DNA of 63,603 bases from Dimorphilus gyrociliatus (Eukaryota > Animalia > Annelida): the NCBI GenBank assembly GCA_904063045.1, contig CAJFCJ010000095.1, positions 42,866 through 106,468 of the forward strand, in the 5' to 3' direction. The notes beneath the pieces are model-generated. The model made no database searches. It worked only from the letters and a program-made list of their open reading frames with translations, and had not been told where the DNA came from. The position numbers and the translations under genes were made by a program. How positions within the stretch are numbered: the stretch's first letter is position 1; the number at the start of each line of letters is the position of its first letter. This document shows, in pieces, positions 30,185 to 55,423 of this stretch.

Positions 30185-30197
30185 TCCCACTCCTTTA
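30185..30197 (-). promoter_or_regulatory. Polypurine tract overlapping the env stop codon
   Basis: Minus strand TAAAGGAGTGGGA directly before the LTR TGT. Confidence 0.85.
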
Positions 30198-32819: not shown

Positions 32820-35800
32820 TCCTTGACCAATGTTTTCATTTCTTATGTGTACCCAATCACCAATTTGTAAGTTGGAGGTTTTCTTGTAATAGCTCTATTA
32901 ACTCTATCTCTATATTCCTTCTTTTTTAGAACAGATTTGCAAAGTGCTGTTGCTCTAATTTCTTCAAGTTCATGTTTTCTATCAAATAAGAATTTTGTTG
33001 TTGGTTCTAATCTTGGAACTTCCATTAACAGGTCTAAAACATTTCTATTCTTCAATCCAAATAATATTTCATGTGGGTTTTGCCAGTGCTTCCAACTGGA
33101 ATTTGATTTAAACATGTCTGAATTAATGGTAACTGTCTTGTCCAATCTGTTAATTGTTCCATAACTACATGTTTATGTAGTGCTCTACGAATTTCCAAAT
33201 TCTTTCTTTCTACCATTCCATTACTTTGGCTATGGAATGCTGTTGTTTTAATTTTTCGTATTCCCATTGATGTCACCATTTCTGTAAAGATTTCCCCAAG
33301 AAAATTCCTTCCTTGATCTGTGAGAATTTCTTCTGGGATACCAATATTGGGAAATAGTTGAAAAACAAATGTTTAGAAATTTCCTCAGCTGTTTGAGTTT
33401 TTAGGGGAATATGGTTGGTAAATCTGGACATGTGGTCTATAATGACAAGTATATACTTGTAAGAATCATGTCCATCAGAGGTCCCATTATGTCCATAGCT
33501 ATTCTTTGCATTGGTAAAGTTGGGTGAGGTGTTTCAACCAACAGATGTTTGTTGCCTGGTGCTCTTAATTGCTCACAAAATTCACAACTCTTTATGTGAT
33601 CTTTAATTGTTTTCTTTAGCTTTGGGTGCCAGAAAGCTTGCTCCAAAGTGTGAATTGTTATGTCTACACCATAGTGCTCAAATAGTTGATGTTGATGAAT
33701 TTGTCCAAGTAAGTTGGTTAGAGTTGATAGTGGAATTACAAGTAGTGGTTGACAGCCATTTAGATACCATACAAGGTCTTCTTTTACAAACATAGATTCA
33801 ATAAAGTTTCCATATTCATTCAAAGACCCATTATCAATGTTTTCTCCTTCCAATTTGTCTACAACTTTCATTAGTGGAGTATCTAATACTTGTTCTCTAT
33901 AGAACTTTATTTCAACTGATGTGGCTTTTAGTTTCATAATCTGGGCTTGGATTTCAGTTATGTCTTCATCATAATCATTGTCTAGATTGTCATCTAAACA
34001 ATCATCTAATTCTTCTAAGTCCTCTGTATCAATATAAAAGCATTTAAGCATATCCTTTCTTTCTGCTAATTGGGGAACTGTATTGCCATTTTGTTTTTCT
34101 TCATTTAATCTTTCCTTAAGTAAATTACGAAAATCAATTACTTCATCAGTTTCACCAATTCTTGATATCCAGTCTGCTCTATTAGTTCTTCCTGGTATGT
34201 ATATTATTTCAAAATCCATATCCATAAGTGCCATCACCCATTTAACAGTACTTGTATTCAGTTTGTTTTGTACAAATGTTTGTACCAAATTTTGGTGATC
34301 AGTGTAGAGAAAAAATTTCTTATACTGTAGATAATGGGAGAATTTTTGTACTGCCCAATATACTGCAAAAGCCTCTTTTTGATAAGCTGCATATCTTAGT
34401 TGTGTATTGATTAGGAGCTTGGAAGCAAAAGAAATTGGTTTTCTTATTTTCTTTCCATCTTCTTCCCATTCTTGTTCTAGAACTGCACCAACTGCATAAT
34501 TAGAAGCATCTGTTGTTAAATAGAATGATTTAGTAAAGTCTGGCAGTTGAAGGATTGGGGCTCTGTCATTGCATTCCTTAGTGTTTCATAAGCTTCCTCC
34601 TTTTTTTGTCCATTTCAGTTTTTCTGTCTTTTGGTGTACTTTTAATAATTCTCTCAAAGGTTTTGTGATTTTTGCAAAATCTTTAACAAATCTTCTATAA
34701 TAACCACAAAATGCCACAAAACTCAACAGAGTATTTGCAAACATAGGTAATTTGGCATCTTTTATTTTTTGAATCTTTTCAGGATCAGTTTCAATACCAT
34801 TCTGTGTAATTCTATGACCAAGGAATTGAACTGATTCTTGTAAGAATGCACATTTGCTCAGTTTAATTCTGAAGTCTTTTTCCTTGATTCTTTCCATAAG
34901 TTTCTGTAGAGCTACAAAGTGTTCTTCCAATGTTTTGGTAAAAACTATAATATCATCCATATAATTAATGCAGAAGTTTTCCAATCCATTAATAACAAAA
35001 TTTGCCATGATATAGCTGAAGTGTGAAGGTGCATTTGCCAAACCAAATGGCATGCGGTTGAATTCAAATAAACCAAATGGTGTAATAAAAGCAGTTTTCT
35101 CCTTATCTTCTTCTTTAATTGGAATATGATGAAATGCACTTGTTAAATCCAATATAGAAAAATATTTGTGGCCTCCTCCAAGCTTATCAAATAAATCTTC
35201 CTGATGTGGGATTGGATAACAATTCTTTTTTGATTGCTTGTTAAGTTTTCTGTAATCCACACACATTCTTAATGTTCCTTCTTTCTTTTTCACAAAAACA
35301 ATGGGTGAAGCCCATTGGCTTTTGCTTGCTCTAATTAGACCATTTTCCAATAATCCATTTAATTGATCCCTGCATTCCTGCTGTTTGTTGGGTGGCAATC
35401 TGTATGGTCTTTGTTTGAAAGGCTTTATATCTTCCAATAATTCAATTGCCATTGGTGGAACATCTGGTGAACCAATGTCATTCTGATTTGTAGCAATAAT
35501 ATCTTCATAATTCTTTATCATTTCTTTTAATTCTTCTCTGTTCTTGTCAAGATTATTTTTGGACACATGTAAATAATTGTCAATTTCTAGTGTATTTGAA
35601 TTAATATTGTGTACATTTTGATTAGACAAATGTTCAAATTCAATACTTTCCAACTGTAATTCTTCTATTTCAGGAGTAACTGGATTTTTCTTTTGTTCTT
35701 TTTGCACTTTGATAGTTATTCCATCTTCTAATTCTATGTATTGTGGTTTCATTTCCATTTCCATAGCCAAGTCTTCAGTTTCTTCTTCAGAGGAATTTAT

Positions 35801-36900
35801 GAGAATAACTGAGTCATTGTCAGACTTAGGTATATTTCCAGTCTCTTCATCAGATGAGTCTATAACCATTATGGAATCATTGTCAGACTCAATTGTGTTA
35901 CTGGTCTCTTCTTCAGATGAGTCTATAACAATCATTGAATCATTATCAGGCTCAGTTATGTTATCAAGCTCTTCCTCAGATGAGTCTATAACAATCATTG
36001 AACCATGATCAGAATCAGTTGAATCACTAATTTCATCTTCAGATGAGCTTGTACCATTGATTATATCCAAATCTGAGTCTGGGCTGTGATCTGATTCAAT
36101 ACTTGTTTCTGTATCATAATTTTCAGAAGTACTGGAACTTTCATCGTGCCATAATTGCTATTTGAATCAAAACCATTGAATCCCTCATAAACTATGCTTG
36201 AACCATGAGTGTTGCTTGTATCATAGCCAGTATCTGGATCAGTAACTTCCATTTCTGAGTCCACACTATCTGAAACTTCAGATGGAGTATCAAAAACTTC
36301 AGATGGAGTGTCAGAATCTTCAAAATACTGTCCCATCATTCCAACAGTTACTTTTTTTACACTGCCTTGTTTTCCAAATTTTGTTTGGTGATTTTCGTTA
36401 TATTGCAAAAACTTTCTAACTGGTTGTCCTTTTCTGATAAAGAATGGAAGAGAAACTTGTTTTGTTGCAAAATCAATAAGAGCTCCAGCATTTTCTAAGA
36501 AATCACAACCAAGTATTATAGCCATATCTAGTTTTTCCATAATAAAGAATTCTTGTTCCATAATTCTTCCATTAAATTGAATATTCAGTTTTGTTTTTCC
36601 TTTTGTCTTTAAAGCATTTCCCTCTGCTGAAGTGATGATTGGTAAGCCAGTAGTTTCTTTCTTGATGAATTTAGAATCCATTAACCTGATTTCTTTTTCT
36701 GTAATAAATGACAAAAGTGCTCCTGAATCACATAAAGCAATAACCTCTCTTCCATTATGATTTTTCATTCGAAATTGGAAATCTTTTCTGCCTTTTACCA
36801 AAGAAGTACACTTAAAATGTGCGATTTTCTCTTCTTTGAGATTAAATATTGCCATTCTTCCTTTAGAAATTTCAGTTTCATTAGGTTCATCAGTCCAACA
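32820..36900 (-). pseudogene. pol: pol (protease, acidic repeat insert, RT, RNase H, integrase) broken by single-base frameshifts in this assembly
   Basis: LCDSGALLSF; PIVFVKKKEGTLRMCVDYRKLN; YMDDII; FYLTTDASNYAVGAVL; HQ..H.G...CEFC; RIAMDIMGP, TDQGRNF, SNGMVER. Frame slips near 32870, 33075, 33345, 33475, 34590 and 36145. Confidence 0.9.
35777..36070 (-). repeat. 63-bp (21-aa) tandem repeat, four good copies plus one degenerate, inside pol between protease and RT
   Basis: SMIVIDSSEEELDNITEPDND / SMIVIDSSEEETSNTIESDND / SIMVIDSSDEETGNIPKSDND / SVILINSSEEETE. Confidence 0.95.
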
Positions 36901-37896
36901 TGTATTAGTCTGTTAAAGCTGCCTTTTTCATTATTTCCTGCATTTCCATTTCTTTGTTGTTGAAATCTATTTTGAGAAAAAGGTTTAAATGTATGTTCAT
37001 TTTGATTTGAGTTACTCTGATTGTTGTCAAATCTCCTTTTGTACTGTTTGAATTCATTTTCGCTTTCTTTTCTTGCATTATCAAAAAATATTTCTGCTCT
37101 TTTTGCCAATTTAATATACTGATTAACTGAGTTAATCTTTCCATCTTTTTCCACATGATTAACAATTTTTCCTTTAAGACCATTCCTGAATACAGTTAAC
37201 AGTTGAAGTTCTCTAACTCTTTCAGTAACACAAGCCATTTCAGTAGTATTGAATGGTAGGAATTTTTCCACAAGTTCTTTACTTCTTCTAACAAAACTTT
37301 GGACAGTTTCATCATTGAACTGTCTCAATCTATCAATTTCTTTTTTGTAAGCCATAGGATCTGGATTAAATTCTTCATCCAATGCATCCCAAATTTCATT
37401 TTCATTTGCCATGGAGGGTAAACTTTCAATAACATCTCTGGCTCTTCCAGTAGTGATTTTCTCAGCATTCGAACTCTTTCTCTTCTGTATCCCAAAGGTT
37501 TAATTCACAAGCTGTTTGAAAGTTCCTCTTAAAGGCCCAAGTATCTTTGCTACCAAATAGGGTCTCAGCAAAGTAGTATTAGGTTTCTCATTAGCATCAA
37601 TTAGAAGACTTGCAATTGTCTTTTCCAAAGCATTATCTTGAATGCCATCATAACTGAATTTTGGTTGAGTAGGATCAGGATTAAACCATACCTTCAGGAA
37701 TTGTAGCTGCCCCAGTCATCAAATGGTACTTTAAAAAGCTATTACCATCAACTTTGGCTCCACTACTTTTAATTCTCAACATTAATTCATTAATTTTTGA
37801 AAGATACTCATCTACTTCCTTGCTCTGGCTTTGTCATCTTCATAAACCAAAATAACATTCATTGAAGTAGCATTGTGGGCTGTCGACTGCGCCATA
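36900..37896 (-). pseudogene. gag: gag (retrotransposon capsid), frameshifted near the contig end
   Basis: MAQSTAHNATSMNVILVYEDDKARA...; ITTGRARDVIESLPSMANENEIWDALDEEF...LRQFNDETVQSFVRR. Confidence 0.75.
37880..37894 (-). promoter_or_regulatory. Primer-binding site, probably for tRNA-Ser
   Basis: TGGCGCAGTCGACAG lies 4 nt after the LTR end. TGGCGCAGTCG is the known tRNA-Ser-type PBS of 17.6/297-like gypsy elements. Confidence 0.8.
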
Positions 37897-37898
37897 TT

Positions 37899-38068
37899 TG
37901 TACTTGTTGTATTGTAATGTAGGAATTTCTGGTTCGTCACAACAATGAATCGTCCTTTCCAATCATTTACAACTTGCCAAAGTACTGTCCAAATAGAACC
38001 TTTAAAGTTCGTCCCAAAATAGTCCTAACAAAGGCAAATTTCGGTAGAAATTGATTAACAAAAACACC
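37899..38068 (-). repeat. 5' LTR, visible U5 end only
   Basis: Matches 29246-29416 with several small indels, as expected at a contig end. Confidence 0.9.
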
Positions 38069-39036
38069 NNNNNNNNNNNNNNNNNNNNNNNNNNNNNNNN
38101 NNNNNNNNNNNNNNNNNNNNNNNNNNNNNNNNNNNNNNNNNNNNNNNNNNNNNNNNNNNNNNNNNNNNNNNNNNNNNNNNNNNNNNNNNNNNNNNNNNNN
38201 NNNNNNNNNNNNNNNNNNNNNNNNNNNNNNNNNNNNNNNNNNNNNNNNNNNNNNNNNNNNNNNNNNNNNNNNNNNNNNNNNNNNNNNNNNNNNNNNNNNN
38301 NNNNNNNNNNNNNNNNNNNNNNNNNNNNNNNNNNNNNNNNNNNNNNNNNNNNNNNNNNNNNNNNNNNNNNNNNNNNNNNNNNNNNNNNNNNNNNNNNNNN
38401 NNNNNNNNNNNNNNNNNNNNNNNNNNNNNNNNNNNNNNNNNNNNNNNNNNNNNNNNNNNNNNNNNNNNNNNNNNNNNNNNNNNNNNNNNNNNNNNNNNNN
38501 NNNNNNNNNNNNNNNNNNNNNNNNNNNNNNNNNNNNNNNNNNNNNNNNNNNNNNNNNNNNNNNNNNNNNNNNNNNNNNNNNNNNNNNNNNNNNNNNNNNN
38601 NNNNNNNNNNNNNNNNNNNNNNNNNNNNNNNNNNNNNNNNNNNNNNNNNNNNNNNNNNNNNNNNNNNNNNNNNNNNNNNNNNNNNNNNNNNNNNNNNNNN
38701 NNNNNNNNNNNNNNNNNNNNNNNNNNNNNNNNNNNNNNNNNNNNNNNNNNNNNNNNNNNNNNNNNNNNNNNNNNNNNNNNNNNNNNNNNNNNNNNNNNNN
38801 NNNNNNNNNNNNNNNNNNNNNNNNNNNNNNNNNNNNNNNNNNNNNNNNNNNNNNNNNNNNNNNNNNNNNNNNNNNNNNNNNNNNNNNNNNNNNNNNNNNN
38901 NNNNNNNNNNNNNNNNNNNNNNNNNNNNNNNNNNNNNNNNNNNNNNNNNNNNNNNNNNNNNNNNNNNNNNNNNNNNNNNNNNNNNNNNNNNNNNNNNNNN
39001 NNNNNNNNNNNNNNNNNNNNNNNNNNNNNNNNNNNG
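38069..39036. other. Assembly gap (968 N)
   Basis: N run. Confidence 1.
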
Positions 39037-40401
39037 AGGTTGGTCAACATGGTCGGATTGGAGTTCTTGCGAACCATCCTGCGGAGATGGTCTTCGAATT
39101 CGTACAAGAAATTGCGATAGTCCACCTCCAATGAACGGAGGTGACGATTGTCCCGGAAGTTCGGTTGACGTTGATATATGTTTAAATCCTCCTTGTAACG
39201 TGGCAAATTCTCAATCGTCTATGGTAAGTATAGTAAGAAATACGAGAATTCCAGAGGGAAGAGTAAAATGGCAAGTAATTTCAACAGAACAAGGAAATTT
39301 TTTTAACACAACAACAAATTCATTGAATGTTGAACAACAAGGATTTTTCTTTACATCAATATCAATTTCAACAAGAAATTCACACTCAGCTAATCTAATA
39401 ATGAAAGATTTTGGTGTTGACATTGCCCTTTCAAGGTTAACTGTACAAACTTCTATATCAGCTACATCGGATATATCAGCTAGATCTGGATTATTTTCAC
39501 TTACGCCTCTATTTAATCCATACATTTACAATGATTTTCTTACTCCAATAGCAAGTTCAACTTCCGGTCAACATATGTCGTGGACTACGTTTCGTTATGA
39601 GACAAACAATGGTTTTTTTGTTGGTAGAGTTACATCATCAAACGGGACTACTGGTTTATTACCGTTTGAAAGAGTTGTAACGTTAAGAGGAGTTGTGCCA
39701 ACAGCCGATAAAAGACAGTTAAGAATTTCGACCAGCGGTCTATACTATATAAACATTGGTATAGGCTTCAATGCTAAAGAAAAGGCGTGGTTAACGCTGG
39801 ACATTAACAATCGTAACAACAAATCCGAATTATCTATTATAAGAAATCATAGAGCCCTTAACGCCTTTGATCAAGCGTCCAGAGGATTTATTATCCAATT
39901 AAACGCTGGCGATAATATTGGTTTAAAACTATTGGAAGGTGAATCGAGGTCAACAAACTATTTGGAAACTTATTTAACAGGTTTCCAATTGGATACATCC
40001 CAAAATAGGCCTATATTTTTTGCCTATAAAACAAAAAGCGTTAATAACGTAGTTAGAAGGAGAATATTATTTGAAGATATATCAATTGACACAACTTCAT
40101 CATGGAGTGCGAATGATCGTTCGTACAAAGTACCAAAAACTGGACTCTACTATGCCGACGTCTCTATTGGATTATATCCACAACGTTTTGGAATTGTCTA
40201 TATAACTGTTAATTTTAATATAAGATTAATATTATGGCGTCAAGTAACAATTCATACGTCATACGATACAGTCAGTAGAGGCGGTTAATACAACTGCAAC
40301 AAGGACAATCTGTTGCAGTTGAATTATTGCAATCTATCTACAGTGAAAATAATATTAAATTAACTTCGTTCGCTTTGTTCTATGTTTCTGAGTTGGAATA
40401 A
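39037..40401 (+). CDS. 3' part of a TSP1 plus triple C1q-domain protein; 1-nt frameshift near 40285
   Basis: WSTWSDWSSCEPSCGDGLRIRTRNC (TSP1). Three C1q-like domains with GFFF, GLYYINI and GLYYADV cores. The third domain is completed in another frame: LIQLQQGQSVAVEL...TSFALFYVSELE*. Confidence 0.85.
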
Positions 40402-41765: not shown

Positions 41766-42476
41766 ATGACATCATTTAGAGAAGATTATAACAATGAAGA
41801 ATGGCCTGAAAATTTTATAAACAATTGGAGACAACCTGATATAGAGAATTTCGCAAATTTATTTCAACTTCATAGATTTATAAAGAGTTTGACAAAAAGT
41901 GGTAAATATTTGGAAATTGGGAGTGGTCCTTCACCTATTGGAATTTTTTCAGCGAGTATCAAATTCGATGACATTACATTATCCGACTTCTCTGATGTTA
42001 ATATCGACTGCTTGAAAAAATGGAAAACTGTAGATGACCTAGACAACATAAGAACTTTGGTTCAGTATGTTTCAGCTTTAGAAGGTCGTGATATTAACGA
42101 AATGAATGAAAATGCATTGAAAAGTGTTAAGAAAATTTCACAGTCGGATTTGCTCAATCATCAAATAATACCAAATGACGATAGTAAGTATGATGTAATC
42201 TCCATGAATTTCGTGTTGCTGTCTGCTTGTAAAACAGAGGAAGATTTGATGAAGTCGTTAAAAAATGTATACAATAAATTGAATCCAGGTGGCGTATTAT
42301 ACGATTACGGAGCTGTAAAACAGCAAAATTATCAAGTAGGGGAAAAAACATTTGCTCATTATTGCATTGATTCAGACAAACTTGTAAATATTGTAGAAGA
42401 AGTTGGCTTCAAAGTATCATCGTACGGAAAGTTTGTCATGAGTGTTCCAACATATTTTTTTATAGCCAGTTGCTGA
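41766..42476 (+). CDS. NNMT/PNMT/TEMT-family SAM-dependent methyltransferase (236 aa, intronless)
   Basis: LEIGSGPS motif I; LSDFSDVNIDCLKKW; YDVISMNFVL; LNPGGVL; C-terminal FFIA. Confidence 0.9.
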   Translation: MTSFREDYNNEEWPENFINNWRQPDIENFANLFQLHRFIKSLTKSGKYLEIGSGPSPIGIFSASIKFDDITLSDFSDVNIDCLKKWKTVDDLDNIRTLVQYVSALEGRDINEMNENALKSVKKISQSDLLNHQIIPNDDSKYDVISMNFVLLSACKTEEDLMKSLKNVYNKLNPGGVLYDYGAVKQQNYQVGEKTFAHYCIDSDKLVNIVEEVGFKVSSYGKFVMSVPTYFFIASC

Positions 42477-43038: not shown

Positions 43039-43977
43039 TTAAATATTTCTGGATGTCACTCTATTTTGTTTAAAGAGATTATAGATGGAGTGTTTAATTG
43101 AAGAATTTCCAATTATTGCTATTATAGGGTTAATTACAGATTGAAGTACAATTATAATATTTGCACTGTTTACAATTTTTATTGTCGTTGCAGTTGGATA
43201 GTAGAAATATATAACAAATGTTAAAGAATATAACATCCAAAGAGAAGCCATTAGGACTAATTGTATTAAAGTTGCTTTAGAGGATTTGGAGATATTTTTA
43301 GTCCTATTTGTTTGTTTTTGTATATCATTTGCATGTTTTTTAGCCAATTTCAAAAGTTTTGAATGTAGAACTAAAGCTCCAAATATATTTGGAAGGAAAA
43401 TAGTTTGATATATAAAAAAATATTCATTTTTATAAACCATATAACCTTGACAAATTGCATATTTTCTATAGCCAAACATTGGAATATAACATGGAAAAAG
43501 ACAAAAGATAAATGAGAATAGAATAATAAGAAAAATAGTAAAAAATGATCTGCAATTAGTGAAATATCTATCATAATGTAAAGGATATTTAATCATAATA
43601 AATCTATAAATAAAACAAAATAATAAATAAATTTGGGATTGAACATAAAAAATTACTTTTAACAAATATGTTAAAATACATAAAACTGGTTGTATACTTT
43701 CCAGATCAACTGATACCCTTATAATTGATTCAGCAATATTCCAGATTAAAATACAAATATCTGCAATGGTTATTGCTGGAATAAATATTACAATTGATTT
43801 AATGATCTGTCTATTTTTTAAAATAATCAATAGTATAAGAGTATTGAGTAATATTCCCAAAGAGAAGAGACTAAAATACAATGTTAATAGTAGTATATAT
43901 TCTATTTCTCCAAATTCAACTATACCAGTTATGTTTGTTCTATTCATTTTCAAATTTAAATTTTCTATTTTCTTCAA
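43039..43977 (-). CDS. Orphan rhodopsin-like GPCR (312 aa, intronless)
   Basis: Seven hydrophobic segments; GILLN (TM1), ADI (TM2), YRFIMIKYPLHY (DRY variant), NPII (TM7). Confidence 0.85.
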   Translation of the reverse strand: MKKIENLNLKMNRTNITGIVEFGEIEYILLLTLYFSLFSLGILLNTLILLIILKNRQIIKSIVIFIPAITIADICILIWNIAESIIRVSVDLESIQPVLCILTYLLKVIFYVQSQIYLLFCFIYRFIMIKYPLHYDRYFTNCRSFFTIFLIILFSFIFCLFPCYIPMFGYRKYAICQGYMVYKNEYFFIYQTIFLPNIFGALVLHSKLLKLAKKHANDIQKQTNRTKNISKSSKATLIQLVLMASLWMLYSLTFVIYFYYPTATTIKIVNSANIIIVLQSVINPIIAIIGNSSIKHSIYNLFKQNRVTSRNI

Positions 43978-44268: not shown

Positions 44269-45854
44269 ATGGAAAAGAAAGTTTTTAATGATGCTGTTCA
44301 TGGTCACATGGGTTTGTATATTTTTTTATTGTTTAATATATAAATCTATCGAAGATAATATACAAAAATTTAGAATTCCATCCTCTACTTATCAAAGTCA
44401 TTGACACGCCTCAATTTCAACGTTTGCGTTATATTAAACAACTCGGACCTTGTCATTTTGTTTATCCATCTGCTACTCATACCAGTTTCGAACATAGTTT
44501 AGGAACATGCTATTTAGCAACTAAACTGCTTAGAGCGCTTAAAACAACTGACGTTAAATGGTTCGATGAAAAAGATATACTTCTAGTGTCTTTGGGAGGT
44601 CTTTGCAGAAATTTGGCAAATGCACCTCTACTTGCTGATTTTCGAGAGAAATTTAGACGTGACTTCAATATGGATGAAAAGGAATTAGCAGTAAAAATAT
44701 TTGATCAAATCATACAAGAAAATAATTTACAACAAGAATTCGAAAAAGAACAATTTCAAGAGAAGGATAGAGAATTTCTTAGAGATTTGATTTTAGGTAA
44801 AAAAACTGGAGAATTTACTGATGTGAAATTTAGAAATAGAAAGTAAAGTTAATTAGTATGTCAAGAATTTGAAAAATTTGAACACAAAATTGTCATTACA
44901 GATTCCTCTATGAAATTATATGGAATAAGGAAAGTGGAGTAGATGTTGATAGGTTTGATTACATTGCAAGGGATTCTTATCATCTTGGAATTAGATCATC
45001 ATTTGATCATTCTCGTTTTATTCAATTCGCAAAAGTTTCCGAAGATAAAGATGATAAAAATTTTAAAATATCTTTAAGAGAAAAAGTATAATATTTTTAT
45101 TCTTAAGTAAAATATTCTTAGTTTTACCAGTTTTTCTTTATTAAGGAGGCAAAGTGCATTTATGAATTATTCCATACAAGATTACAGCTACATGAGAGAG
45201 CTTATCAGCATAAAACTTGCAAAGCTATAGCGTTAATGTGAGTGTAATGAATACAATTTTCAATGAATAATACCCCAATCCCTCTTCTTTAGGATGTATG
45301 ACGCTTTAATCATGGCAACGGATAATTTTCAATTGAAAATAAAGAATGAAGAAGGAGAAATTGAAGAAGTAAAACTTGGTGAAATATGCCAAAATGTTGA
45401 CGCTTTTAATCAATTTACTGATGAGATATTTTCAAGAATACTTTATTCTACTGACGACAATTTGAAAGATGCCCAACAACTTTTAAGGAGAATCCATCAA
45501 AGGAAACTTTACAGGTGTATTGTTGAAGTAAGCGATGATGATAAAATGAAAGAAGTAGATGAAATCTTAACTTTTCATTTAGAAGATAAAAAAGAATTAC
45601 TTACAAAATACAAAACCATATTCAATTTTGCTCCAGATATGAAAAATATGAATCCAGTTGAAAAATTCCTTTTCTATAAAAAATCTGAACCAGACAAACC
45701 TTTTAAACTTAAAAAAGAAAGAGTTAGTAAATTTTTACCTGAGAATTTTCAAGAAATTAGACTAAGAGTCTATTATAAAGGAGTTGATAAAGAGGAATGT
45801 CGTGAAATAAGGGAAAAGTTTAAAGAGCTTTTGGGAAGCGAGTATATTCAATAA
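44269..45854 (+). CDS. SAMHD1: SAMHD1-like protein without a SAM domain and with a degenerate HD site; five exons, join(44269..44311,44374..44842,44902..45085,45146..45237,45293..45854), 449 aa
   Basis: KVFNDAVHGHM, IDTPQFQRLRYIKQLG, FEHSLG, DVDRFDYIARD, HTRLQLHERAYQHK. All four introns are GT-AG and the joined length of 1350 nt is in frame. Confidence 0.93.
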
Positions 45855-47512: not shown

Positions 47513-47956
47513 TCACATAAGTGTTTTTGTTTTCTTATTATCCATTTTTGATGATTTTTTTCTTATTTGGCCATGAGACATTATTACTTGGATGATGGTT
47601 ACCATCACTCCAGCTCCTACCATATTTTTAGTGACTCTAAAGTTTTTTTCACCATCTTTTGTCCATGTCCTGAAATCATCAGGCCCACTCAGAGAGAATC
47701 TGGCCTTGTCTGTGAAAATCACTCTTGACCAGTCCAGATTTTCAGCAATTGTTTTGAGGCAGTATTCTTTTCTTCTTGCTGAATCCTTAGGTGTGAGATC
47801 AACTCTCTGTCTAATCCTTTTATAATTATAATTTTGCCTCTTCAGCTCTCTCTGAATGGTCTTGAGATTCACATCAACCCTTGCAGTTGCCCTAATTTTT
47901 CCTAATTCCTCATATTTCTTAACAACCAGATTCCTAACCTCTTTATCCCATGCCAT
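47513..47956 (-). mobile_element. Tc1-like transposase, internally deleted and truncated
   Basis: KTIQRELK, DWSRVIFTDKARFSLSGPD, GAGVMV. CAGT-type TIR-like starts lie nearby, but no matching pair was confirmed. Confidence 0.8.
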
Positions 47957-50900
47957 AATTAAGTAAATAGAATTTAAAGTTAACTACAGTTATTAAAATA
48001 GATCAAAAGTGATTACTTAACTTTGAAAATTAGTTTGGACAAAAAAAATTTCTGTTTAGGATGTCAATTTGAATCCAAAACCGGAAACAAAATGGATGTG
48101 CTGTTAATAACATTTCATGGCCAAATAAAGAAAAAACTAATTAAAATTAGCAAAAATTTTTTCCTATTAGCATTCACAAATATGATAATTTTGTCATTTT
48201 TTTGAATATTACATAAATATAACCCTTTATCAATATAAATTGCCTAAAAAAACATGTTTTTGGGGTGATTTAAAATTGACCTATCAAAATTTACAGTTTC
48301 TTAGTCCACCACTATACATTGGTAATCTCTCAAAGATATTGCAGATTAATATTTATTGTAGCATTAGATAATTGCTATTGTTAGTTGAATAGGTAGATTG
48401 AGTAGTATAGAGTTAAAAACTGGAGAGAGATGGAATTAAAACCCTGAAAGTTTATCTACTCTTTCAGATGATTTTTTACTGTAATGTTCCTCTTTAGCAT
48501 CCAATCATCATATTACTGATCAAAAATAACTATTAAATAGGCCATTGTCTTGTTTATCCCCTACAAGATGTAATAAATTTGCATTTTTCAGTCTGTAGAA
48601 AATGAACTACTGAACTATCACTATAAAAAAATATTAAAATGTTTAGAAGGTGATACAAAATTTCAAACTTACCTAGTGCAGGAAAAAGTGATTGAAGAGA
48701 ATTTTTTAACTGAGCAATTTGACTTTGAAAATGTTTTCAAGAAATATATTCAATATGTACCAACAGCTTTATTCCTTCAAATCTTACTTAAAATAAACAC
48801 AGTTAAATGTTCAAGACTTGCAGAAACAATTAGCAATACTTGGACTAATTTAATAAAAGAGAGAAAAAAGCAAGTGTCCAAGGATTTTGAAACAATTCCA
48901 AAATTTCCATTCTTAAAAGAAAATCCTTCTCATATTAATTTTAGTAAGATTTTTACACCTATCCAACTTGTATCCTCTAAACACTTGATAGTTGATGAAA
49001 ACTTTGGTAATGTTCAATCCTTTCAAAAGATTTTAATCAATGAGCAAAATAAAAGAATTCTAGTTAGAGGAGACGCTGGTATGGGTAAAACTTATCATGC
49101 AATGAAAATTTTACATTCATGGTTCATGATGACGCATTTTTGGACAATTATCTCCTTTTATATATTAAACTAGGAGATGTTCAAAGTAATTCCAGTGAAC
49201 AATCTTTGGCTGATGTTCTGTTTACAAGTAATTTTAAGACAGACTCCTGTGTAACCAAAGAACTCTTTCAATACTTTTTTGAAGGGAGAGAATGCAAAGA
49301 AAAGATGATTCTACTTTGGATGGGGCAGATGAACTTAAATATGAAGATTCAATATTTAATCTCATAGTACAAAAGTGTAATTTTACAACCTATCCCATAA
49401 TTGTTTGGGCAAGAAATTGGAAGATCAAAGAGGTTAGCGACACTTATGATTTTGTATTTGATATTAATGGATTCAATGAAAGCCAATTGAAAATGTATTT
49501 TCAAAAATTTTTCAATGAAGAGTACCAACCGTTTGTAAAGCCCATAAATGATTCTCTTGATCAAAAAAAGGCAGAAAAGTCTGAAATACTATTCCAAACT
49601 CTAAAAACAGAAAACTTAAAAGTCTTTAAGATTTGTAATAATCCATTAATGGCATGTTTAGTAGCTGGTATATGGGAGGAAAGGGAAACTGACATTATAT
49701 CTAATAAATATTCCATCTTTGATCAAACAATACAGATTCTTCTCTCCAAAGCTGGAATTGTTTCAGAAAGTAATGTTTATTTTGAAATATTGGACTACTG
49801 TTCAAAACTTGCCTTTGAAAATTTACTTAACAATAAAAAAATATCAATAAATGAAATTTTACAGAAGTCAGATTTCATTGGTGGATTATTGATTCCAGTT
49901 AAGAAAAGATCAGTTGTGACCCATTTGCAAGAGTTTACATTTATACACTTCTTCTTTCAAGAATATCTCACTGCAAGATACATTCTTAATCTATACAAAG
50001 AAGGCACTAATAATGAAATGAATATTCAATCATTAAAATCCTATTTTGATAAGTTTAAAAATCTGTTTCTATTGAAGAATGTTTTCAGCTTCATTCAAGA
50101 AATAAACAGTAAAGTATTTTCTCAAATGATTGAAGAGAATGAAAATATTCTCACGGTATTGGAAACTGATCAAAGAATTATTGAAGTAATTAATACAAGG
50201 GATAAAAACTCAATTGAATTGGAGGAAATTTCATTATCATCGACTATAATTGATATTCTATTTGATTGTTATCAAAAAAATGTTAAAGTCATTAATCTTA
50301 AGTTTGTCAAGATGAATTTACCACATTTTATAGAAAGTTGTGTTAACCAATTAGAAGATAAATTAGAAATTTTGAAACTCTATGGAGGTGTTGAAGAATT
50401 AATAAAAATTGAAATACTTGAAAACTTAATGAGAAAAATGAAAAAGTTGAAAGTTTTAAATATAACTAATATTTCATTCAATGGTTGTTTGAAACTGTCA
50501 TCTTTTATACATTCAACATGTCTGGAAGATTTAACATTGGAAAATTGTAATTTACATAATTGTTCAGATACATTTTTCAATATTAAATTTAATTGTCTTT
50601 ATTGTTTCAATGTTTCTGAAAATTTATTTACAGGTAAGGCTATTTTTTAAAGAAATATTTCTGTTTTTTTAAACAATAATTACTTTTGTAGATAATCGCT
50701 TGGATGGTATATTTATAAATAACAGAAATATTATCTCATTAAATCTCTCAAAATGTTTTGATTCATCAAAACAATCAAAAATTATATTAAATCATCTTAA
50801 AAACCTCAATGACTTGTCATCTCTCAACTTTTCAGATAATATAATTCCAGTTGATAAAGGTTATATGATATTTGCAAATCAATATAGACAAATGACAGCT

Positions 50901-52993
50901 TTGCAAATTAACAATTGCAATACAGAGCTTGATTCAGAAGTGATAAAAAATTTTTTGGAGCTAAATAAACAAATAGAAGTTCTTGAGTTGAAAGGAAATG
51001 TTGTGAAGGAAAGCTATGAAAATTCCTTTCTTACTGTTCTTTTATCATTGCAAAATATGACACATCTAAAATTGCCAAGAATAGTCCATAAGAAAAACAT
51101 TTGGAGAGATCAAAAATTATCAGAAAATAAAAAAAACTTAATAAATCTAAAATCTTTGGATATGGGAGAAAATTGTATTCAATGTGTGTGTATAGCTAAC
51201 TTTTTTGAACAAGTTTCACAAAGTTCAAAATATTTATACTCTCTATGTTTAAGAAAGTCTAGAATTTCTTCACAAGTTGTTAACATTCTGTCAAACTCTT
51301 ATAATAAATGGGATGAAAGACAAGTAGAGTCCAAGACTGAAAATCTCCAGATTGTAAATCTCTGCTGGAAATTTCAATCGTGTGAATTTGAATTGAACTC
51401 AAATGACATTGATAAACTGTTCAATGGCATGTTTTACTTCAAACAATTAGATATATCCAATATAAATGCAGCATTAGTTATTAAAAATCTGTTTAAATCA
51501 AAATCTCTTGAAAGAATTGAAAGTTTAATATTAAGAAATTGTCATATAACACCAAAAGAGCTAGCTGAACTTGGTAAACATATTCATACATTTACATCTT
51601 TAAAAAAATTGGACATATCATATAACAAAATTGATTCACCATCCCTTTTATCTTTTTTCAAACAATTTAATTTTGAAAATCAAAAATTAATTAGACAACT
51701 CTATATACACAATTGTAATTTTCATTTGAAAGATGTCATTCAAATTTGTCAAGCTATTAATAATTTTGACAACTTGGATATTTTAAATTCATTGTTCAAT
51801 CCTCAATGTATTACTAAAATCAATTTTAAGGAATTGGAAAAATGCTTAATTCAGAAGCATTCAATCTGTTTTTCATTGGAAAAATACTAGATGATTTTTC
51901 AGATATGTTAGAAAGTAAAATCTTAAAAATTTCCAACAAATTCTTCTTTACTTTGGAAAATATTCTGTATATAATCAAAGAAAGCCAATCAATTGTTATT
52001 GACACATTGCAAACATATTCTGAGCTAAATAATGAGCAAACAAATTTTGAATTAAATACTTTTAATAATGAGCAAAGATCACTTCTAAGAGATGCTTTTA
52101 AGAATAATAGCTCTTTTCAAACACTACAAAAATTCAGAATTGATGCTAAAAATATTTCAGAGAAATTTTTTGAAGATTTACTTAACACTATCAAAGAGAA
52201 ATGCTATCGTCTAACTGAGATCACCATAATAAATTGCACATTTCATCAGAAAATTCCAAATATTGTTGTTCAAATGACAAAACAACAGCCCAATCTTGAA
52301 AGCATGGTCTTTTCTAATGTTCAGTTTGGTACTCAATTAAGCAAAGAGCTATTTCAGCATATAATAGATAGAAAAATACAGTTATCCTGCATATGTTTAT
52401 CTAAATGTGGATTACATTCAGATATTTTTAACATTATTGGTAAGGCAATCAGCATACTACCTGAAATTACTAAATTATATTTTGAAGATAACTCTCTTGG
52501 ATCAATAGTTGGAAAAGAAATCTTTAAAATAATTAAAAAACATTGCAAAAAATTGACAATTATAGGGTTTTGTAACTGTGATATTGAATCACAAGTTGAA
52601 ACTCTTGTTGGAGAAGCAATTGGAATGCAACCAGAGCTTTTTCATCTTGACCTCTCAAACAATTTGCTTGGCACAGAAATTGGAAAAAGTTTATTTGAAA
52701 ATCTTAACACAAATTGCACAAAATTGAAAACAATAGTTCTAATGAACTGTGGATTTGGATCAAAATTGATTCTGTTATTGGGGAAGCAATAGGTAAACAA
52801 ACTCAACTAACAGAACTTTTTCTGCAAGATAATAAAATTGGAACTATAGTTGGAAAGCATATATTTGAAAATATTGAGAAAAATTGCACAAATTTGTCAG
52901 TAATAAATCTAAGCAGCTGTGGAATTGAATCACAAATTGGTTCTGTTATTGGAGAAGCAATTGGAAAGCAAAAAGGCCTTACTGCAATCAGTC

Positions 52994-53046
52994 TGTTGCA
53001 TAAAATAATAGAGTTCAAGCATGTAAAATATAACCAAAGTTGTACA
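52994..53046 (-). mobile_element. 53-bp terminal fragment of the second LTR family inside the LRR array
   Basis: Identical to 54937-54989 and ends exactly at the LTR terminus TGTACA. Confidence 0.9.
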
Positions 53047-54354
53047 ATGCATTGACCTATCTAACTGTGGATTGGGATCAGATATTGGTAATGTTGTTGG
53101 TGCAGCAATTGGAAAGCAAAAAGGCCTTACTGTGTTACAACTCTCAAATAATCCTCTGGGAACTGAAGTAGGAAAAAATATATTTGAAAATATTAAAGGA
53201 ACTTGCACAAAATTAGCATGCATTGACCTATCTAACTGTGGGTTGGGATCAGATATTGGTAATACTGCTGGTAAAGCAATTGGAAAGCTAAGTGACCTTA
53301 CTGTGTTACAACTCTCAAATAATCCTCTGGGAACTGAAGTAGGAAAAAATATATTTGAAAATATTAAAGGAACTTGCACAAAATTAATCCAGATTGCTTT
53401 TGACAACTGTGGATTTGGGTCTGAAATTGGCTCAATTGTTGGTGAAGCAATAGGTAAACAAACTCAACTATCACTCCTGTATTTGCAACATAATGAAATT
53501 GGAACTATAGTCGGAAAGTATATTTTTGAAAATATTAAATTTAACTGCACAAAATTGAGCAAAATTGCTTTTGACAACTGTGGATTTGATTCTGCAATTG
53601 GTCCAATAGTTGGGGAAGCAATAGGTAAACAAACTCAACTAACAGAACTTTTTCTGCAAGATAATAAATTTGGAACTATAGTTGGAAAGCATATTTTTGA
53701 AAATATTAAATTTAACTGTACACATTTGTCAACAATTTGTCTGAATAATTGTGGATTACAATCAGAAATTGGTCCAATAGTTGGTGAAGTAATTGGTAAG
53801 CAAACAGAGCTTACTGGAATATCTTTGACAAAAAATCCAATTGGAACAGAAGTTGGCATTGGAATCTTTGAAAACATTAAAAGAAATTGCACAAAATTAT
53901 CAAGTATTTGCTTAAATAACTGTGGAATAGAATCACAAATTGGCCTGGTAATTGGTGAAGCAATAGGCAAGCAAAAACATCTCACTGCACTGGATCTGTC
54001 AAACAATCCACTTGGAACAGAAGTGGGAAAAAATTTAATTGAAAATCTTAAAGCAAATTGCACAAGATTATCAGAAATATATCTAAACAACTGTGGATTT
54101 GATTCAAATATTGGACCCGCTATTGGTGAAGCAATAGGCAAGCAAAAACAATTAAGTGTCCTTGACATTGGAAACAATGCAGTGGGATCTGTAGTTGGAA
54201 GAAATATATTTGAAAACATTAAAGATAATTGTAAGCAATTAATTAAAATAAATCTAATAAAATGTGATCTTGAATCAAATATTGGTGAAGCTATTGTTGA
54301 AGCAATTGGAAAGCAAAAACAGCTCTCTCAACTGAATCTTTCAGACAATCCACT

Positions 54355-54989
54355 TGTACTGCTCTTGCTGGCAAAATCTATGCGTTTGCAAGTTATAACA
54401 ATACTGGTTCTACTCGAACCTTTAAACAAATGTTTAAATTAAAACGGTTTATTCGCAATAATAATACTTAAGCAAGTAACGATAGGAGAGTTCGATAGCA
54501 GAGTAGATAGTTTGTAAAAGCAGGTTGCCAAATTACCAAACTGTCTTCTAATGTTGAGGAGTAGATGGATGGTTCCAGTGGAGGTTGTTTCCAGATGACT
54601 TTCCCAGGTCCTTGGGTCCAGATGGAAGCTGCATGCCAAATGAGAATAATGAGGATTTATATACTTTGAGGTTTGTCTCTGACATCCAATCATCACTTTA
54701 CAGTTGCCGAAATGTGTAGTTCATATTTATCTTTAGTAACAGGATGTTACAAGGTTCAACATTTAGGAAGGTTAATTGAATTATAACTTGGCCACACCCT
54801 AGGCAAGTTAATTAAATTATAACTTGGCCAAACCTTTATTGGTAATTAAAGATGAACCTTCAAGCTGACTAATCAGACTTATGTTTGGCCAATGTTATAG
54901 CATTTTCTTGAGTAGGTTTTAAGATGTACATGTATATGTTGCATAAAATAATAGAGTTCAAGCATGTAAAATATAACCAAAGTTGTACA
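54355..54989 (-). mobile_element. Complete 635-bp 3' LTR of a second retroelement family
   Basis: TGTA...TACA termini; preceded by PPT AAGAAGGGGGAAGT (54990-55003); internal TATATAAA and AATAAA; inserted after the LRR codons for DNPL. Confidence 0.9.
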
Positions 54990-55020
54990 ACTTCCCCCTT
55001 CTTTGTGAAGATGAGTCCCT

Positions 55021-55423
55021 TCATCTTGATTTAATGAGAATTACAGGTGGTTGTTCTTCTTCATTAGTTTGATGTTGACTAAAGCTACAACTTTGTTTCA
55101 TTAGTTTTGGGTTTTCAGGAGAGTTATCTGTGCTCTCACTTGGGGTAGCAATTTCTTCTCTTTGTTTTCTTCTTCCAATAATATAGTTGAAAATGATGAT
55201 ACATACCATTGACACTACAATACTCAAACAAATATTTCGTATGATAACATAAAGTGTTTTCCCAGGTTTATAGTACCAACTATGGAAAAACTTTTTAATT
55301 CCAGATAAATTGGGTACAATGCCATTTTTCTCTGCAACAGTGACCATGTTATCATACCTTGCCTGCTTCTGTTCCAGTGAACTGATAACTTGCTTAATTT
55401 TTGAGTGCTGGTATGCAATATTG
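55021..55423 (-). pseudogene. env: C-terminal remnant of a second env gene
   Basis: HSKIKQVISSLEQ...AEKNGIVPNLSGIKKFFHSWYYKPGKTL plus a TM segment aligns with HYQIQQVLEYIQD...ANDLGIDAALSPTQHLFSSWIRKPFKIL plus TM of the first env. PPT and LTR follow. Confidence 0.85.

What the first reader, a model, noticed from the sequence alone, without database searches (positions are those of the whole stretch)
44269..45854. Intact SAMHD1 paralog with a dismantled catalytic site but preserved allosteric sites (pseudo-dNTPase)
The five-exon gene is in frame, yet LCHDLGHGPFSHMFD is replaced by LCRNLANAPLLADFR, HNRFEH by HTSFEH, and WTHE by NMDE (seen). In human numbering this gives R164S, H206R, D207N, H210N, H215A, D218R and H233D, removing metal ligands and catalytic residues (established). 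Several are multi-base codon changes, so sequencing error is unlikely. GTP/dNTP allosteric and tetramer residues are kept: K116, N119, D137, Q142, R145, R333, R352/K354, H376/K377, R451. It could be a nucleotide sensor, a dominant-negative or hetero-tetramer regulator of active SAMHD1, or a nucleic-acid-binding antiretroelement factor (inference). It sits between env-bearing retroelements and an NLR.
Basis: partly seen in the sequence, partly recalled or inferred. Interest (0 to 1): 0.85.

Follow-up and report, generated by a model that had tools for sequence, protein, structure and literature searches.

The report
Catalytically dead SAMHD1 duplicate, annelid worm
A miniature marine worm keeps an intact extra copy of the dNTP-degrading immune enzyme SAMHD1 in which the metal-binding catalytic centre has been dismantled while the nucleotide-sensing pockets and the fold are preserved, so it is a natural 'dead enzyme' that most likely binds or regulates rather than degrades.

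Summary
Window 44269-45854 (+) is a five-exon, 449-aa gene. It is identical to database protein DgyrCDS14884 of the annelid Dimorphilus gyrociliatus, so the window is not human. Every exon matches the SAMHD1 catalytic core. The predicted fold superposes on SAMHD1 crystal structures (TM 0.87-0.90).

In human numbering, R164, H206, D207, H210, H215 and D218 are replaced by S, R, N, N, A and R, and no His stands near H233. H167 and D311 remain. Pfam's HD model no longer matches.

All seven allosteric-site-1 residues and eight of nine site-2 residues are kept. The same genome holds two tandem paralogues with an intact HD motif. The closer one shares all four intron positions and phases.

The losses are concentrated. 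13 of 26 family-invariant columns are changed in the catalytic segment, against 2 of 44 elsewhere. Outside that segment the gene evolves about as fast as its active paralogue. Synonymous sites are saturated, yet the frame is open. This argues for a selectively maintained pseudoenzyme, not a decaying gene.

Expression and the actual role are not established. A mixed-oligomer regulator and an autonomous nucleotide or nucleic-acid binder both remain possible. Similar dead SAMHD1-like paralogues occur in fishes, snails and a jellyfish, and I found no paper describing them.

The parts
44269..45854 (+). Whole gene, start codon to stop. It has five exons and encodes 449 aa (DgyrCDS14884 / P0001). It is SAMHD1-like, has no SAM domain, and begins at the equivalent of human residue 113.
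44269..44311 (+). Exon 1 (residues 1-14 plus one base, phase 1). Carries the allosteric-site-1 residues K4, V5 and N7, equivalent to human K116, V117 and N119.
44374..44842 (+). Exon 2 (residues 15-171). Holds the guanine pocket of allosteric site 1 and the whole degenerate catalytic segment.
44403..44429 (+). D25, Q30 and R33, equivalent to human D137, Q142 and R145. This is the guanine-recognition pocket of allosteric site 1, and it is kept.
   Evidence: residue roles from PMC7854603
44484..44495 (+). S52 stands in place of R164, which contacts the alpha-phosphate. H55 is equivalent to H167, the first HD-motif metal ligand, and is kept.
   Evidence: roles from PMC7311409
44601..44645 (+). 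Degenerate HD loop. R93-N94 replace H206-D207, N97 replaces H210, A102 replaces H215 and R105 replaces D218. The family-invariant G209, G211 and S214 are also changed.
44652..44690 (+). Segment aligned to the human H233 region. H233 is the ligand of the second metal. This segment contains no histidine.
44902..45085 (+). Exon 3 (residues 172-232). D185 and D187 are equivalent to D309 and D311 and are kept. K312 is R. Y315 and D319 are kept. The allosteric-site-2 residues D330, R333, R352 and K354 are kept.
45146..45237 (+). Exon 4 (residues 233-263). N358 is C. R366, H370, Y374, Q375, H376 and K377 are kept.
45293..45854 (+). Exon 5 (residues 263-449 and the stop), forming the C-terminal lobe. 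R333 is equivalent to R451 and K393 to K523; both are kept. K455 is R, as in the active paralogue.

Best explanation
What is shown. The gene is a lineage-specific DNA-level duplicate of the worm's own SAMHD1-type dNTP triphosphohydrolase. It has lost the chemistry of the enzyme: half of the Fe-binding HD quartet, the ligand of the second metal, the general acid and its relay partner, and two alpha-phosphate contacts. It keeps the fold, the deoxynucleoside-contacting part of the substrate pocket and both allosteric nucleotide pockets.

What is inferred, with good support. It is held by purifying selection as a protein, so it is a pseudoenzyme and not a dying gene.

What is inferred, and is my committed mechanism. 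It still binds GTP/dGTP in site 1 and a dNTP in site 2. It still assembles into SAMHD1-like dimers and tetramers, because those pockets are built at subunit interfaces. Within the assembly it contributes allosteric pockets but no hydrolysis. The most likely partners are the two HD-intact paralogues (DgyrCDS6560 and its tandem neighbour). The dead subunit would then tune, probably damp or re-threshold, dNTP hydrolysis, as dead paralogues of other oligomeric enzymes do.

My confidence that it is a maintained, catalytically dead paralogue is about 0.9. My confidence in the mixed-oligomer mode specifically is about 0.4. The figure given below is for the statement as a whole.
For: - Homology of all four searchable exons to SAMHD1: E = 1e-29, 3e-16, 2e-4 and 1.6e-18.
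- AF2 model: pLDDT 92.4, pTM 0.92. It matches SAMHD1 cores at TMq 0.87-0.90.
- Catalytic set: 2 of 9 residues kept. Deoxynucleoside/substrate-pocket set: 8 of 9. Allosteric set: 15 of 17, the same as the active paralogue and within the range of 280 catalytically intact relatives (median 16).
- Published mutants H206R/D207N, H215A, D218A and H233A are inactive or greatly slowed; H215A, D218A and H233A still tetramerise with GTP plus dNTP (PMC7311409). The window's protein combines natural equivalents of all of them.
- Pfam HD: 46.9 and 38.6 bits for the two paralogues, and no hit for this gene.
- The gene and its paralogue are reciprocal best hits at 51-55% identity. The three Dimorphilus genes form a clade in 100/100 and 85/100 bootstraps.
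- All four introns share position and phase with the paralogue.
- Family-invariant columns changed: 13/26 in ref 160-240 versus 2/44 elsewhere, Fisher p = 1.4e-5.
- Outside that segment, lineage-specific changes number 30-45 against 21-34 for the active paralogue, mostly not significant.
- pS = 0.73 (saturated) against pN = 0.28.
- After only 0.1 neutral substitutions per site, an open frame would survive with p of about 5e-4.
- Dead paralogues acting through hetero-tetramers have precedent, for example trypanosomatid deoxyhypusine synthase (PMC3663545).
Against: - No expression evidence. I found no transcript-derived protein fragment of this gene. The held supplement of the genome paper did not let me look the gene up.
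- No orthologue from another dinophilid is available. Selection on this branch alone cannot be measured, and pairwise dS is saturated.
- Identity to the active paralogue is only 51-55%. Retention of a hetero-interface is therefore not assured and was not modelled.
- The genes lie on different scaffolds, so co-regulation is not implied.
- Retention of allosteric and pocket residues could partly reflect structural roles of the same helices.
- The AF2 model leans on an alignment of active relatives.
- The overall relative-rate test shows this gene is faster than its paralogue (47-60 against 25-38 unique changes).
Confidence: 0.5

Rival explanations
1. It is an autonomous, non-catalytic binder. 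The dead protein works on its own as a homo-oligomer. It would sense or sequester GTP/dNTPs, or bind single-stranded nucleic acids through the site-1 guanine pocket and H376. In that case it could act against retroelements or viruses without dNTP hydrolysis.
For: - D137, Q142, R145, R451 and H376 are all kept. These residues hold G-containing oligonucleotides in human SAMHD1 (PMC7854603).
- Eight of the 9 substrate-pocket residues that contact the sugar/base are kept although the chemistry is gone. This hints that ligand binding in the pocket still matters.
- The gene sits in a stretch with two NACHT genes, a TSP1-C1q gene and several transposable elements.
- Several unrelated animals have dead SAMHD1-like paralogues that also keep allosteric residues.
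Against: - Position next to immune-type genes and transposons is not a functional link.
- R164, H210 and K312, which hold the triphosphate, are changed, so dNTP binding in the old active site may be weak.
- No binding data exist.
- The kept residues may be structural.
Confidence: 0.25
2. It is a non-functional gene on its way out. The copy would be unexpressed or useless, and its frame would still be open by luck or because the loss is recent.
For: - No transcript or peptide evidence was found.
- It lies on a small, transposon-rich scaffold of 184,822 bp.
- It evolves faster overall than its paralogue.
Against: - The 449-codon frame is open and all four splice sites are canonical, in a 29% G+C genome where 225 single-base changes would create a stop.
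- Four catalytic-segment codons differ by three bases from the paralogue, so the loss is old. Even so, 42 of 44 invariant columns outside the segment are intact.
- The rate outside the segment equals that of the active paralogue.
- pN is far below the saturated pS.
Confidence: 0.08
3. It is a neo-functionalised enzyme. The remodelled pocket (H167 and D311 kept; new R, N, N, A, R and acidic residues nearby) would perform a different reaction or bind a different metal or substrate.
For: - Two metal ligands survive, along with D309, Y315, D319, R366, H370 and Y374.
- The replacements in the pocket are not random-looking small residues. They include two new arginines.
Against: - Seven residues needed for the known mechanism are gone.
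- No known HD-family profile matches.
- The laboratory H206R/D207N pair, identical to the natural one, leaves the HD metal site empty (PMC7311409).
- Nothing in the data points to a new chemistry.
Confidence: 0.07
4. It is an artefact of sequencing, assembly or annotation.
For: None found. The only point is that the scaffold is small.
Against: - Multi-base codon differences occur at the critical sites.
- Identity to the nearest paralogue is 51-55%, so it is not a haplotig.
- My own reading of the exons reproduces the deposited 449-aa protein exactly.
Confidence: 0.01

Closest known systems
Vertebrate SAMHD1 (human 7ujn, 4bzb, 6tx0; mouse 6brk; pig 5yhw)
   Same: Same fold (TMq 0.87-0.90, 35-38% identity). 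Both allosteric pockets match. The deoxynucleoside-contacting pocket residues match. The C-terminal lobe matches.
   Different: It has no SAM domain and no C-terminal regulatory tail; it spans about human residues 113-579. H206, D207, H210, H215, D218, H233 and R164 are all replaced, so the canonical Fe-Mg mechanism cannot run. Pfam HD does not match.
Laboratory catalytically dead SAMHD1 mutants (H206R/D207N 'RN', H215A, D218A, H233A, H210A)
   Same: The natural protein carries the very same R-N pair and the same H215A. For this reason the RN constructs of mouse and pig rank above wild type in the PDB search. The published single mutants H215A, D218A and H233A keep nucleotide-driven tetramerisation (PMC7311409).
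   Different: Here the changes are natural and combined, seven at once. They are accompanied by loss of the invariant G209, G211 and S214 in the loop. Whether assembly survives the combination is not known.
Dimorphilus gyrociliatus DgyrCDS6560 (P0153) and its tandem neighbour (L001 7620-9598)
   Same: These are the closest relatives, at 51-55% identity. The length is similar (452 aa), neither has a SAM domain, and all four introns sit at the same positions and phases.
   Different: Both have the complete HD quartet and all auxiliary catalytic residues, and both match Pfam HD. They sit in tandem on a 4.6-Mb scaffold, while the dead copy is on a 185-kb scaffold.
Dead paralogues that regulate an oligomeric active enzyme (trypanosomatid deoxyhypusine synthase, PMC3663545; from my own knowledge also the AdoMetDC prozyme and DNMT3L)
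   Same: A duplicate of a homo-oligomeric enzyme that has lost catalytic residues but keeps the fold and the interfaces.
   Different: For those cases hetero-oligomers are demonstrated. Here it is inference only.
Degenerate HD-family domains (HDOD; 'YN-GYP' type HD-GYP proteins), recalled from my own knowledge and not tested here
   Same: HD-superfamily domains that have lost the metal ligands and serve in binding or signalling.
   Different: They belong to different branches of the superfamily, are bacterial, and have no SAMHD1-type allosteric sites. No profile of these families matched.
Other natural HD-degenerate SAMHD1-like proteins seen here (cyprinid fishes P0054/P0124/P0127/P0144, snails P0109/P0017/P0092, jellyfish P0049, unnamed ENA metagenome-assembly cluster P0112)
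   Same: The catalytic set is reduced to 2-6 of 9 residues, while 12-16 of 17 allosteric residues are kept in most of them.
   Different: They are independent events. Each is nearest to proteins of its own group, not to the worm gene. Their substitutions differ, for example Y-N in cyprinids. Some may be faulty gene models. None is characterised as far as I could find.

Membership tests
SAMHD1-type dNTP triphosphohydrolase | Sequence homology across the catalytic core | tested here: met
   For each searchable exon the top hits are SAMHD1 chains or, for exon 4, the related HD-domain protein 9mr6. The full-length protein P0001 gives 650 SAMHD1-family hits at 35-51% identity.
SAMHD1-type dNTP triphosphohydrolase | SAMHD1 fold | tested here: met
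   The AF2 model has pLDDT 92.4. Foldseek matches SAMHD1 cores at TMq 0.87-0.90 and E about 1e-32. This is a prediction, not a solved structure.
SAMHD1-type dNTP triphosphohydrolase | HD metal-binding quartet H167, H206, D207, D311 | tested here: not met
   Only H167 and D311 are present. Residue 206 is R and 207 is N. In the 301-sequence sample these columns are H in 289-300 sequences and D in 288-290.
SAMHD1-type dNTP triphosphohydrolase | Auxiliary catalytic residues R164, H210, H215, D218, H233 | tested here: not met
   They are S, N, A, R and no His; 0 of 5 are kept. Roles are from PMC7311409.
SAMHD1-type dNTP triphosphohydrolase | Match to the Pfam HD domain model PF01966 | tested here: not met
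   There is no hit at E <= 1. The paralogues score 46.9 and 38.6 bits against a cut-off of 22.
SAMHD1-type dNTP triphosphohydrolase | Allosteric site 1 (K116, V117, N119, D137, Q142, R145, R451) | tested here: met
   7 of 7 are identical. Roles are from PMC7854603.
SAMHD1-type dNTP triphosphohydrolase | Allosteric site 2 (V156, D330, R333, R352, K354, N358, H376, K377, K523) | tested here: met
   8 of 9 are identical, with N358 changed to C.
SAMHD1-type dNTP triphosphohydrolase | N-terminal SAM domain | tested here: not met
   The protein starts at the equivalent of residue 113. An in-frame stop lies 33 nt upstream of the ATG. Both active paralogues, and many fish and invertebrate SAMHD1-like proteins, also lack the SAM domain, so this feature does not separate dead copies from live ones.
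SAMHD1-type dNTP triphosphohydrolase | dNTP hydrolysis and nucleotide-driven tetramerisation | not testable with these tools
   There is only inference from residues and from published mutants.
Pseudoenzyme (dead paralogue of an active enzyme) | A catalytically competent-looking paralogue in the same genome | tested here: met
   DgyrCDS6560 and its tandem neighbour have all catalytic residues.
Pseudoenzyme (dead paralogue of an active enzyme) | Maintained by selection despite loss of catalysis | tested here: met
   The evidence is indirect:
- Losses are confined to the catalytic segment (p = 1.4e-5).
- The rate elsewhere equals that of the active paralogue.
- pN is 0.28 against a saturated pS of 0.73.
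- The open frame is improbable under drift.

No branch-specific dN/dS is possible without an orthologue.
Pseudoenzyme (dead paralogue of an active enzyme) | Expressed as RNA and protein | tested here: inconclusive
   No transcript-derived fragment turned up in the protein collections. The supplement look-up was uninformative.
Processed pseudogene / retrocopy | Intronless copy of the parent mRNA | tested here: not met
   There are four introns at the same positions and phases as in the paralogue.

The most novel reading that the evidence does not exclude
Dead SAMHD1 paralogues would form a recurrent, so far undescribed class of animal proteins. Duplicates would repeatedly discard the HD chemistry but keep the GTP/dNTP pockets. 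They would then serve as nucleotide- or nucleic-acid-gated, hydrolysis-independent immune or regulatory factors. The worm gene would be a clean natural separation-of-function example, sitting in an immune-gene and transposon island. This would bear directly on the long dispute over dNTPase-independent activities of SAMHD1.
Probability: 0.25. Interest if true: 0.75.

Novelty: new variant of a known kind. Interest (0 to 1): 0.55.

Why it matters
Whether SAMHD1 does anything important apart from hydrolysing dNTPs is still argued. Candidate roles are nucleic-acid binding, repair and restriction, and the argument rests mostly on engineered dead mutants. Here evolution has made and kept such a mutant. 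It has the same H206R/D207N pair and H215A that structural biologists use, plus four more losses, on a protein whose allosteric pockets are untouched. Active sister genes sit in the same small genome. If the gene is expressed, it is a natural test case for the non-catalytic functions of the fold and for regulation of dNTP pools by mixed oligomers. Comparable dead copies in fishes, snails and a jellyfish suggest a general evolutionary route rather than a one-off.

Tried and rejected
Searches that led nowhere
- Orthologues or transcript fragments of the dead gene. An unrestricted-length phmmer search with exon 2, the full protein and exon 2 in the short-length range found nothing closer than the 51-55% paralogue. 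Branch-specific dN/dS was therefore impossible.
- Pairwise Nei-Gojobori counts. I took them exon by exon and summed the counts. Synonymous sites are saturated (pS 0.73), so only a bound is available.
- Expression look-up in the genome paper's supplements. The gene identifiers there (DgyrG...) could not be matched to DgyrCDS14884, and the file was cut when stored.
- Protein id for the tandem neighbour. It did not surface among the best 120 hits, so I used contiguous references within single exons instead.
- One script call returned no answer and was repeated.

Readings rejected
- Retrocopy: the introns are shared with the paralogue.
- Haplotig or assembly duplicate: identity is only 55%.
- Sequencing error: the codon changes involve several bases.
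- A second copy in the window: none was found.

Context
- The 873-aa ORF in the env position has no Pfam hit and no PDB sequence match.
- No LTR pair was found between 28.5 and 39 kb.
- I did not pursue the retroelement further.

Left out
- I sent no self-joined spliced protein to any search tool. Searches were done exon by exon, by reference. The full-length protein was used only as the database record P0001.
Full report
**Origin of the window**

The window has 27-33% G+C. The gene's introns are about 60 nt long. A phmmer search of 1.84 billion representative proteins with exon 2 returned a 449-aa protein that is 100% identical (P0001). The sources name it DgyrCDS14884 of the annelid Dimorphilus gyrociliatus (CAD5126856.1). 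It lies on scaffold CAJFCJ010000095.1, which is 184,822 bp long. The window corresponds to about positions 42,866-106,468 of that scaffold.

The window is not human, and no contig that I take for human was fetched. Some human SAMHD1 protein records came back among the homologues and sat in the family alignment. I took residue numbers from an orang-utan protein of 626 aa (P0246). I cross-checked them against the full-length human PDB chain 7ujn_A as printed by the tool.

**Gene model**

Reading the sequence gives five exons on the + strand: 44269-44311, 44374-44842, 44902-45085, 45146-45237 and 45293-45854. The four GT..AG introns are 62, 59, 60 and 55 nt long, in phases 1, 2, 0 and 2. The CDS is 1350 nt. 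The exon translations map without mismatch onto P0001. An in-frame stop lies 33 nt upstream of the ATG.

I sent no self-joined protein to any search tool. Where the full-length protein was needed, I used the database record P0001.

In one script I joined eight codons on either side of each candidate intron of the paralogue. This was only to locate its splice sites, and nothing was kept.

**What it is related to**

The top PDB sequence hits of each searchable exon are SAMHD1 chains, with E-values of 1e-29, 3e-16 and 1.6e-18 for exons 2, 3 and 5. For exon 4 the related HD-domain protein 9mr6 comes first and SAMHD1 follows at 2e-4. The full protein finds 650 SAMHD1-family proteins at 35-51% identity.

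An AlphaFold2 model built on a 90-sequence alignment has mean pLDDT 92.4 and pTM 0.92. It superposes on SAMHD1 catalytic-core structures with TM 0.87-0.90. The protein spans roughly human residues 113-579. It has no SAM domain and no C-terminal tail.

**The active site**

In the 301-sequence alignment the catalytic set reads as follows.

| Human residue | State in this protein |
|---|---|
| R164 | S |
| H167 | H (kept) |
| H206 | R |
| D207 | N |
| H210 | N |
| H215 | A |
| D218 | R |
| H233 | absent |
| D311 | D (kept) |

The family-invariant G209, G211 and S214 of the loop are also replaced, and K312 is R.

The published mechanism assigns these roles (PMC7311409):
- H167, H206, D207 and D311 bind Fe.
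- D207 and H233 bind the second metal.
- R164, H210 and H215 hold the alpha-phosphate.
- H215 is the general acid, relayed by D218.

In the same paper H233A lowers kcat about 300-fold. H215A, D218A and H233A still tetramerise. The H206R/D207N double mutant is inactive with an empty HD metal site.

The worm protein naturally combines the R-N pair, H215A and the other losses. Fittingly, the RN constructs of mouse and pig SAMHD1 outrank the wild type in the PDB search. Pfam's HD model does not match at E <= 1, and no NCBIfam dGTPase model matches. Loss of the canonical dNTPase chemistry is therefore a strong inference from established knowledge, though it was not measured.

**What is kept**

- Allosteric site 1: K116, V117, N119, D137, Q142, R145 and R451, 7 of 7.
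- Allosteric site 2: V156, D330, R333, R352, K354, H376, K377 and K523 are kept, and N358 is C, so 8 of 9.
- K455 is R, as in the active paralogue.
- Substrate-pocket residues that contact the sugar and base: Q149, L150, Y315, D319, R366, H370, Y374 and Q375 are kept.
- Residue roles: D137, Q142, R145 and R451 form the guanine pocket. H376 contacts bound oligonucleotides. R352, K354, K377 and K523 hold the site-2 triphosphate (PMC7854603).

**Paralogues**

The best hit of P0001 is DgyrCDS6560 (P0153). It is 452 aa long, 51% identical by BLASTP and 55% over aligned columns, and the two are reciprocal best hits among single-domain proteins. It lies on a 4.6-Mb scaffold in tandem with another HD gene of 467 aa.

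Both have every catalytic residue and both match Pfam HD. The three worm genes form a clade in 100/100 (N-terminal region) and 85/100 (C-terminal region) neighbour-joining bootstraps.

The C-terminal region pairs the dead gene with DgyrCDS6560 (92/100). The N-terminal region does not (28/100). That is expected if the N-terminal region of the dead gene has accelerated, or if the tandem pair has exchanged sequence.

All four introns of the dead gene and of DgyrCDS6560 share position and phase. The copy therefore arose by DNA duplication, not by retroposition. No further copy is in the window.

**Is it maintained?**

No orthologue exists in the collections, so I used four indirect tests.

1. Location of the losses. 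Of 70 columns that are at least 95% conserved in the family, the dead gene departs at 15. Thirteen of these lie among the 26 such columns of ref 160-240, and 2 among the 44 elsewhere (Fisher p = 1.4e-5). The active paralogue departs at 3.
2. Relative-rate counts with ten outgroups. The dead gene has 47-60 unique changes against 25-38 for the paralogue (p between 0.0004 and 0.12). Without ref 160-240 the counts are 30-45 against 21-34, mostly not significant.
3. Substitution levels. Synonymous sites between the two genes are saturated (pS 0.73), while pN is 0.28.
4. Survival of the open frame. In this A+T-rich gene 225 of 4014 single-base changes create a stop. After 0.1 neutral substitutions per site, an open frame would survive with probability of about 5e-4.

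Four catalytic-segment codons differ at all three bases from the paralogue, so the catalytic loss is not recent. Together these results say that constraint was lifted from, or selection acted on, the catalytic centre only. The rest of the protein has stayed under constraint like that on the active enzyme.

**How it most likely works**

Three things are shown: dead chemistry, intact allosteric pockets and fold, and active sisters in the genome. From these I infer that the protein still binds GTP/dGTP and dNTPs at the interface pockets and oligomerises.

My preferred mode is a non-catalytic subunit in mixed oligomers with the active paralogues, tuning dNTP hydrolysis. There is precedent in dead paralogues of other oligomeric enzymes (PMC3663545).

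The main rival is an autonomous nucleotide or single-stranded nucleic-acid binder that uses the guanine pocket and H376. Less likely are a non-functional gene, a new chemistry, or an artefact.

Expression is the largest gap. I found no transcript evidence either way.

**Comparison with what is known**

The fold and the allosteric architecture are those of SAMHD1. The defining HD quartet and the catalytic residues were tested and are not met. I therefore file the gene as a SAMHD1-family pseudoenzyme, not as a dNTPase.

Full-text searches for SAMHD1 with 'pseudoenzyme', 'paralog', 'catalytically inactive', 'gene duplication' and 'teleost' found no description of natural dead SAMHD1 paralogues. 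The genome paper does not mention SAMHD1.

In my own sample, other natural SAMHD1-like proteins have 2-6 of the 9 catalytic residues and mostly 12-16 of the 17 allosteric residues. Each is nearest to proteins of its own group, so the losses are independent. Some of these may be faulty gene models.

**Surroundings**

- Upstream: a 1727-aa NACHT ORF (14701-19887, -).
- A FLYWCH/MULE transposase ORF (26405-27337, +).
- An LTR-retroelement region (30195-37412, -). It has gag, aspartic-protease, reverse-transcriptase and integrase hits spread over four ORFs. An uninterrupted 873-aa ORF sits in the env position. That ORF has no Pfam or PDB sequence match.
- A TSP1-C1q ORF (38051-40288, +).
- An NNMT-type methyltransferase gene (41766-42476, +).
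- A rhodopsin-type 7TM ORF (43039-43977, -) that the assembly's gene calls omit.
- Downstream: a Tc3-type transposase fragment (47513-47956, -).
- A large gene with a weak NACHT P-loop hit at its start and LRRs further on (about 48676-55854+, +).

The genome paper describes Dingle, a Ty3/gypsy family with an env similar to herpesvirus glycoprotein B (PMC7854359). I did not test whether this copy belongs to it. I found no LTR pair.

At the very start, in my private reasoning, I recalled a stretch of human SAMHD1 from memory. All residue mapping rests on tool output.

**Verdict**

This is a new variant of a known kind. Interest is moderate to good, pending expression data.

Noticed in passing
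L001 7620-9598 and 10001-11636 (CAJFCJ010000007.1): The two HD-intact SAMHD1-like genes of the worm lie in tandem, about 400 bp apart. A CARD-domain gene lies a few kb upstream. The upstream copy appears to lack the first intron that the other two genes share.
   Followed up: partly
proteins P0054, P0124, P0127, P0144, P0109, P0017, P0092, P0049, P0112: These are natural SAMHD1-like proteins with degenerate HD motifs. Most keep the allosteric residues. The losses look independent.
   Followed up: partly
window 43039-43977 (-): An open 311-aa rhodopsin-family 7TM ORF (Pfam 7tm_1, E = 1.5e-12). It lies head to head with the SAMHD1-like gene, about 290 bp from its ATG. It is absent from the assembly's called genes.
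   Followed up: partly
window 30195-37412 (-): An LTR-retroelement region. The gag, protease, RT and integrase hits lie in four separate ORFs. An uninterrupted 873-aa ORF in the env position has no Pfam or PDB sequence match. It is possibly a Dingle element (PMC7854359). No LTR pair was found nearby, and a 63-nt unit is repeated inside the RT-side ORF region. Breaks were not analysed.
   Followed up: partly
window 14701-19887 (-) and about 48676-55854 (+): Two NACHT-type genes flank the region. One is a single 1727-aa ORF. The other is a large gene with a weak NACHT P-loop hit at its start and LRRs at 53072-54442.
   Followed up: partly
window 38051-40288 (+): A single 745-aa ORF that combines a thrombospondin type-1 repeat with a C1q domain.
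   Followed up: no
window 26405-27337 (+) and 47513-47956 (-): DNA-transposon remains: a FLYWCH/MULE transposase ORF and a Tc3-type HTH fragment.
   Followed up: no
PDB entry 9mr6_A: A recently solved 483-aa 'HD domain-containing protein' is the best PDB match of exon 4 and a good match of the other exons. Its organism and function were not looked up.
   Followed up: no
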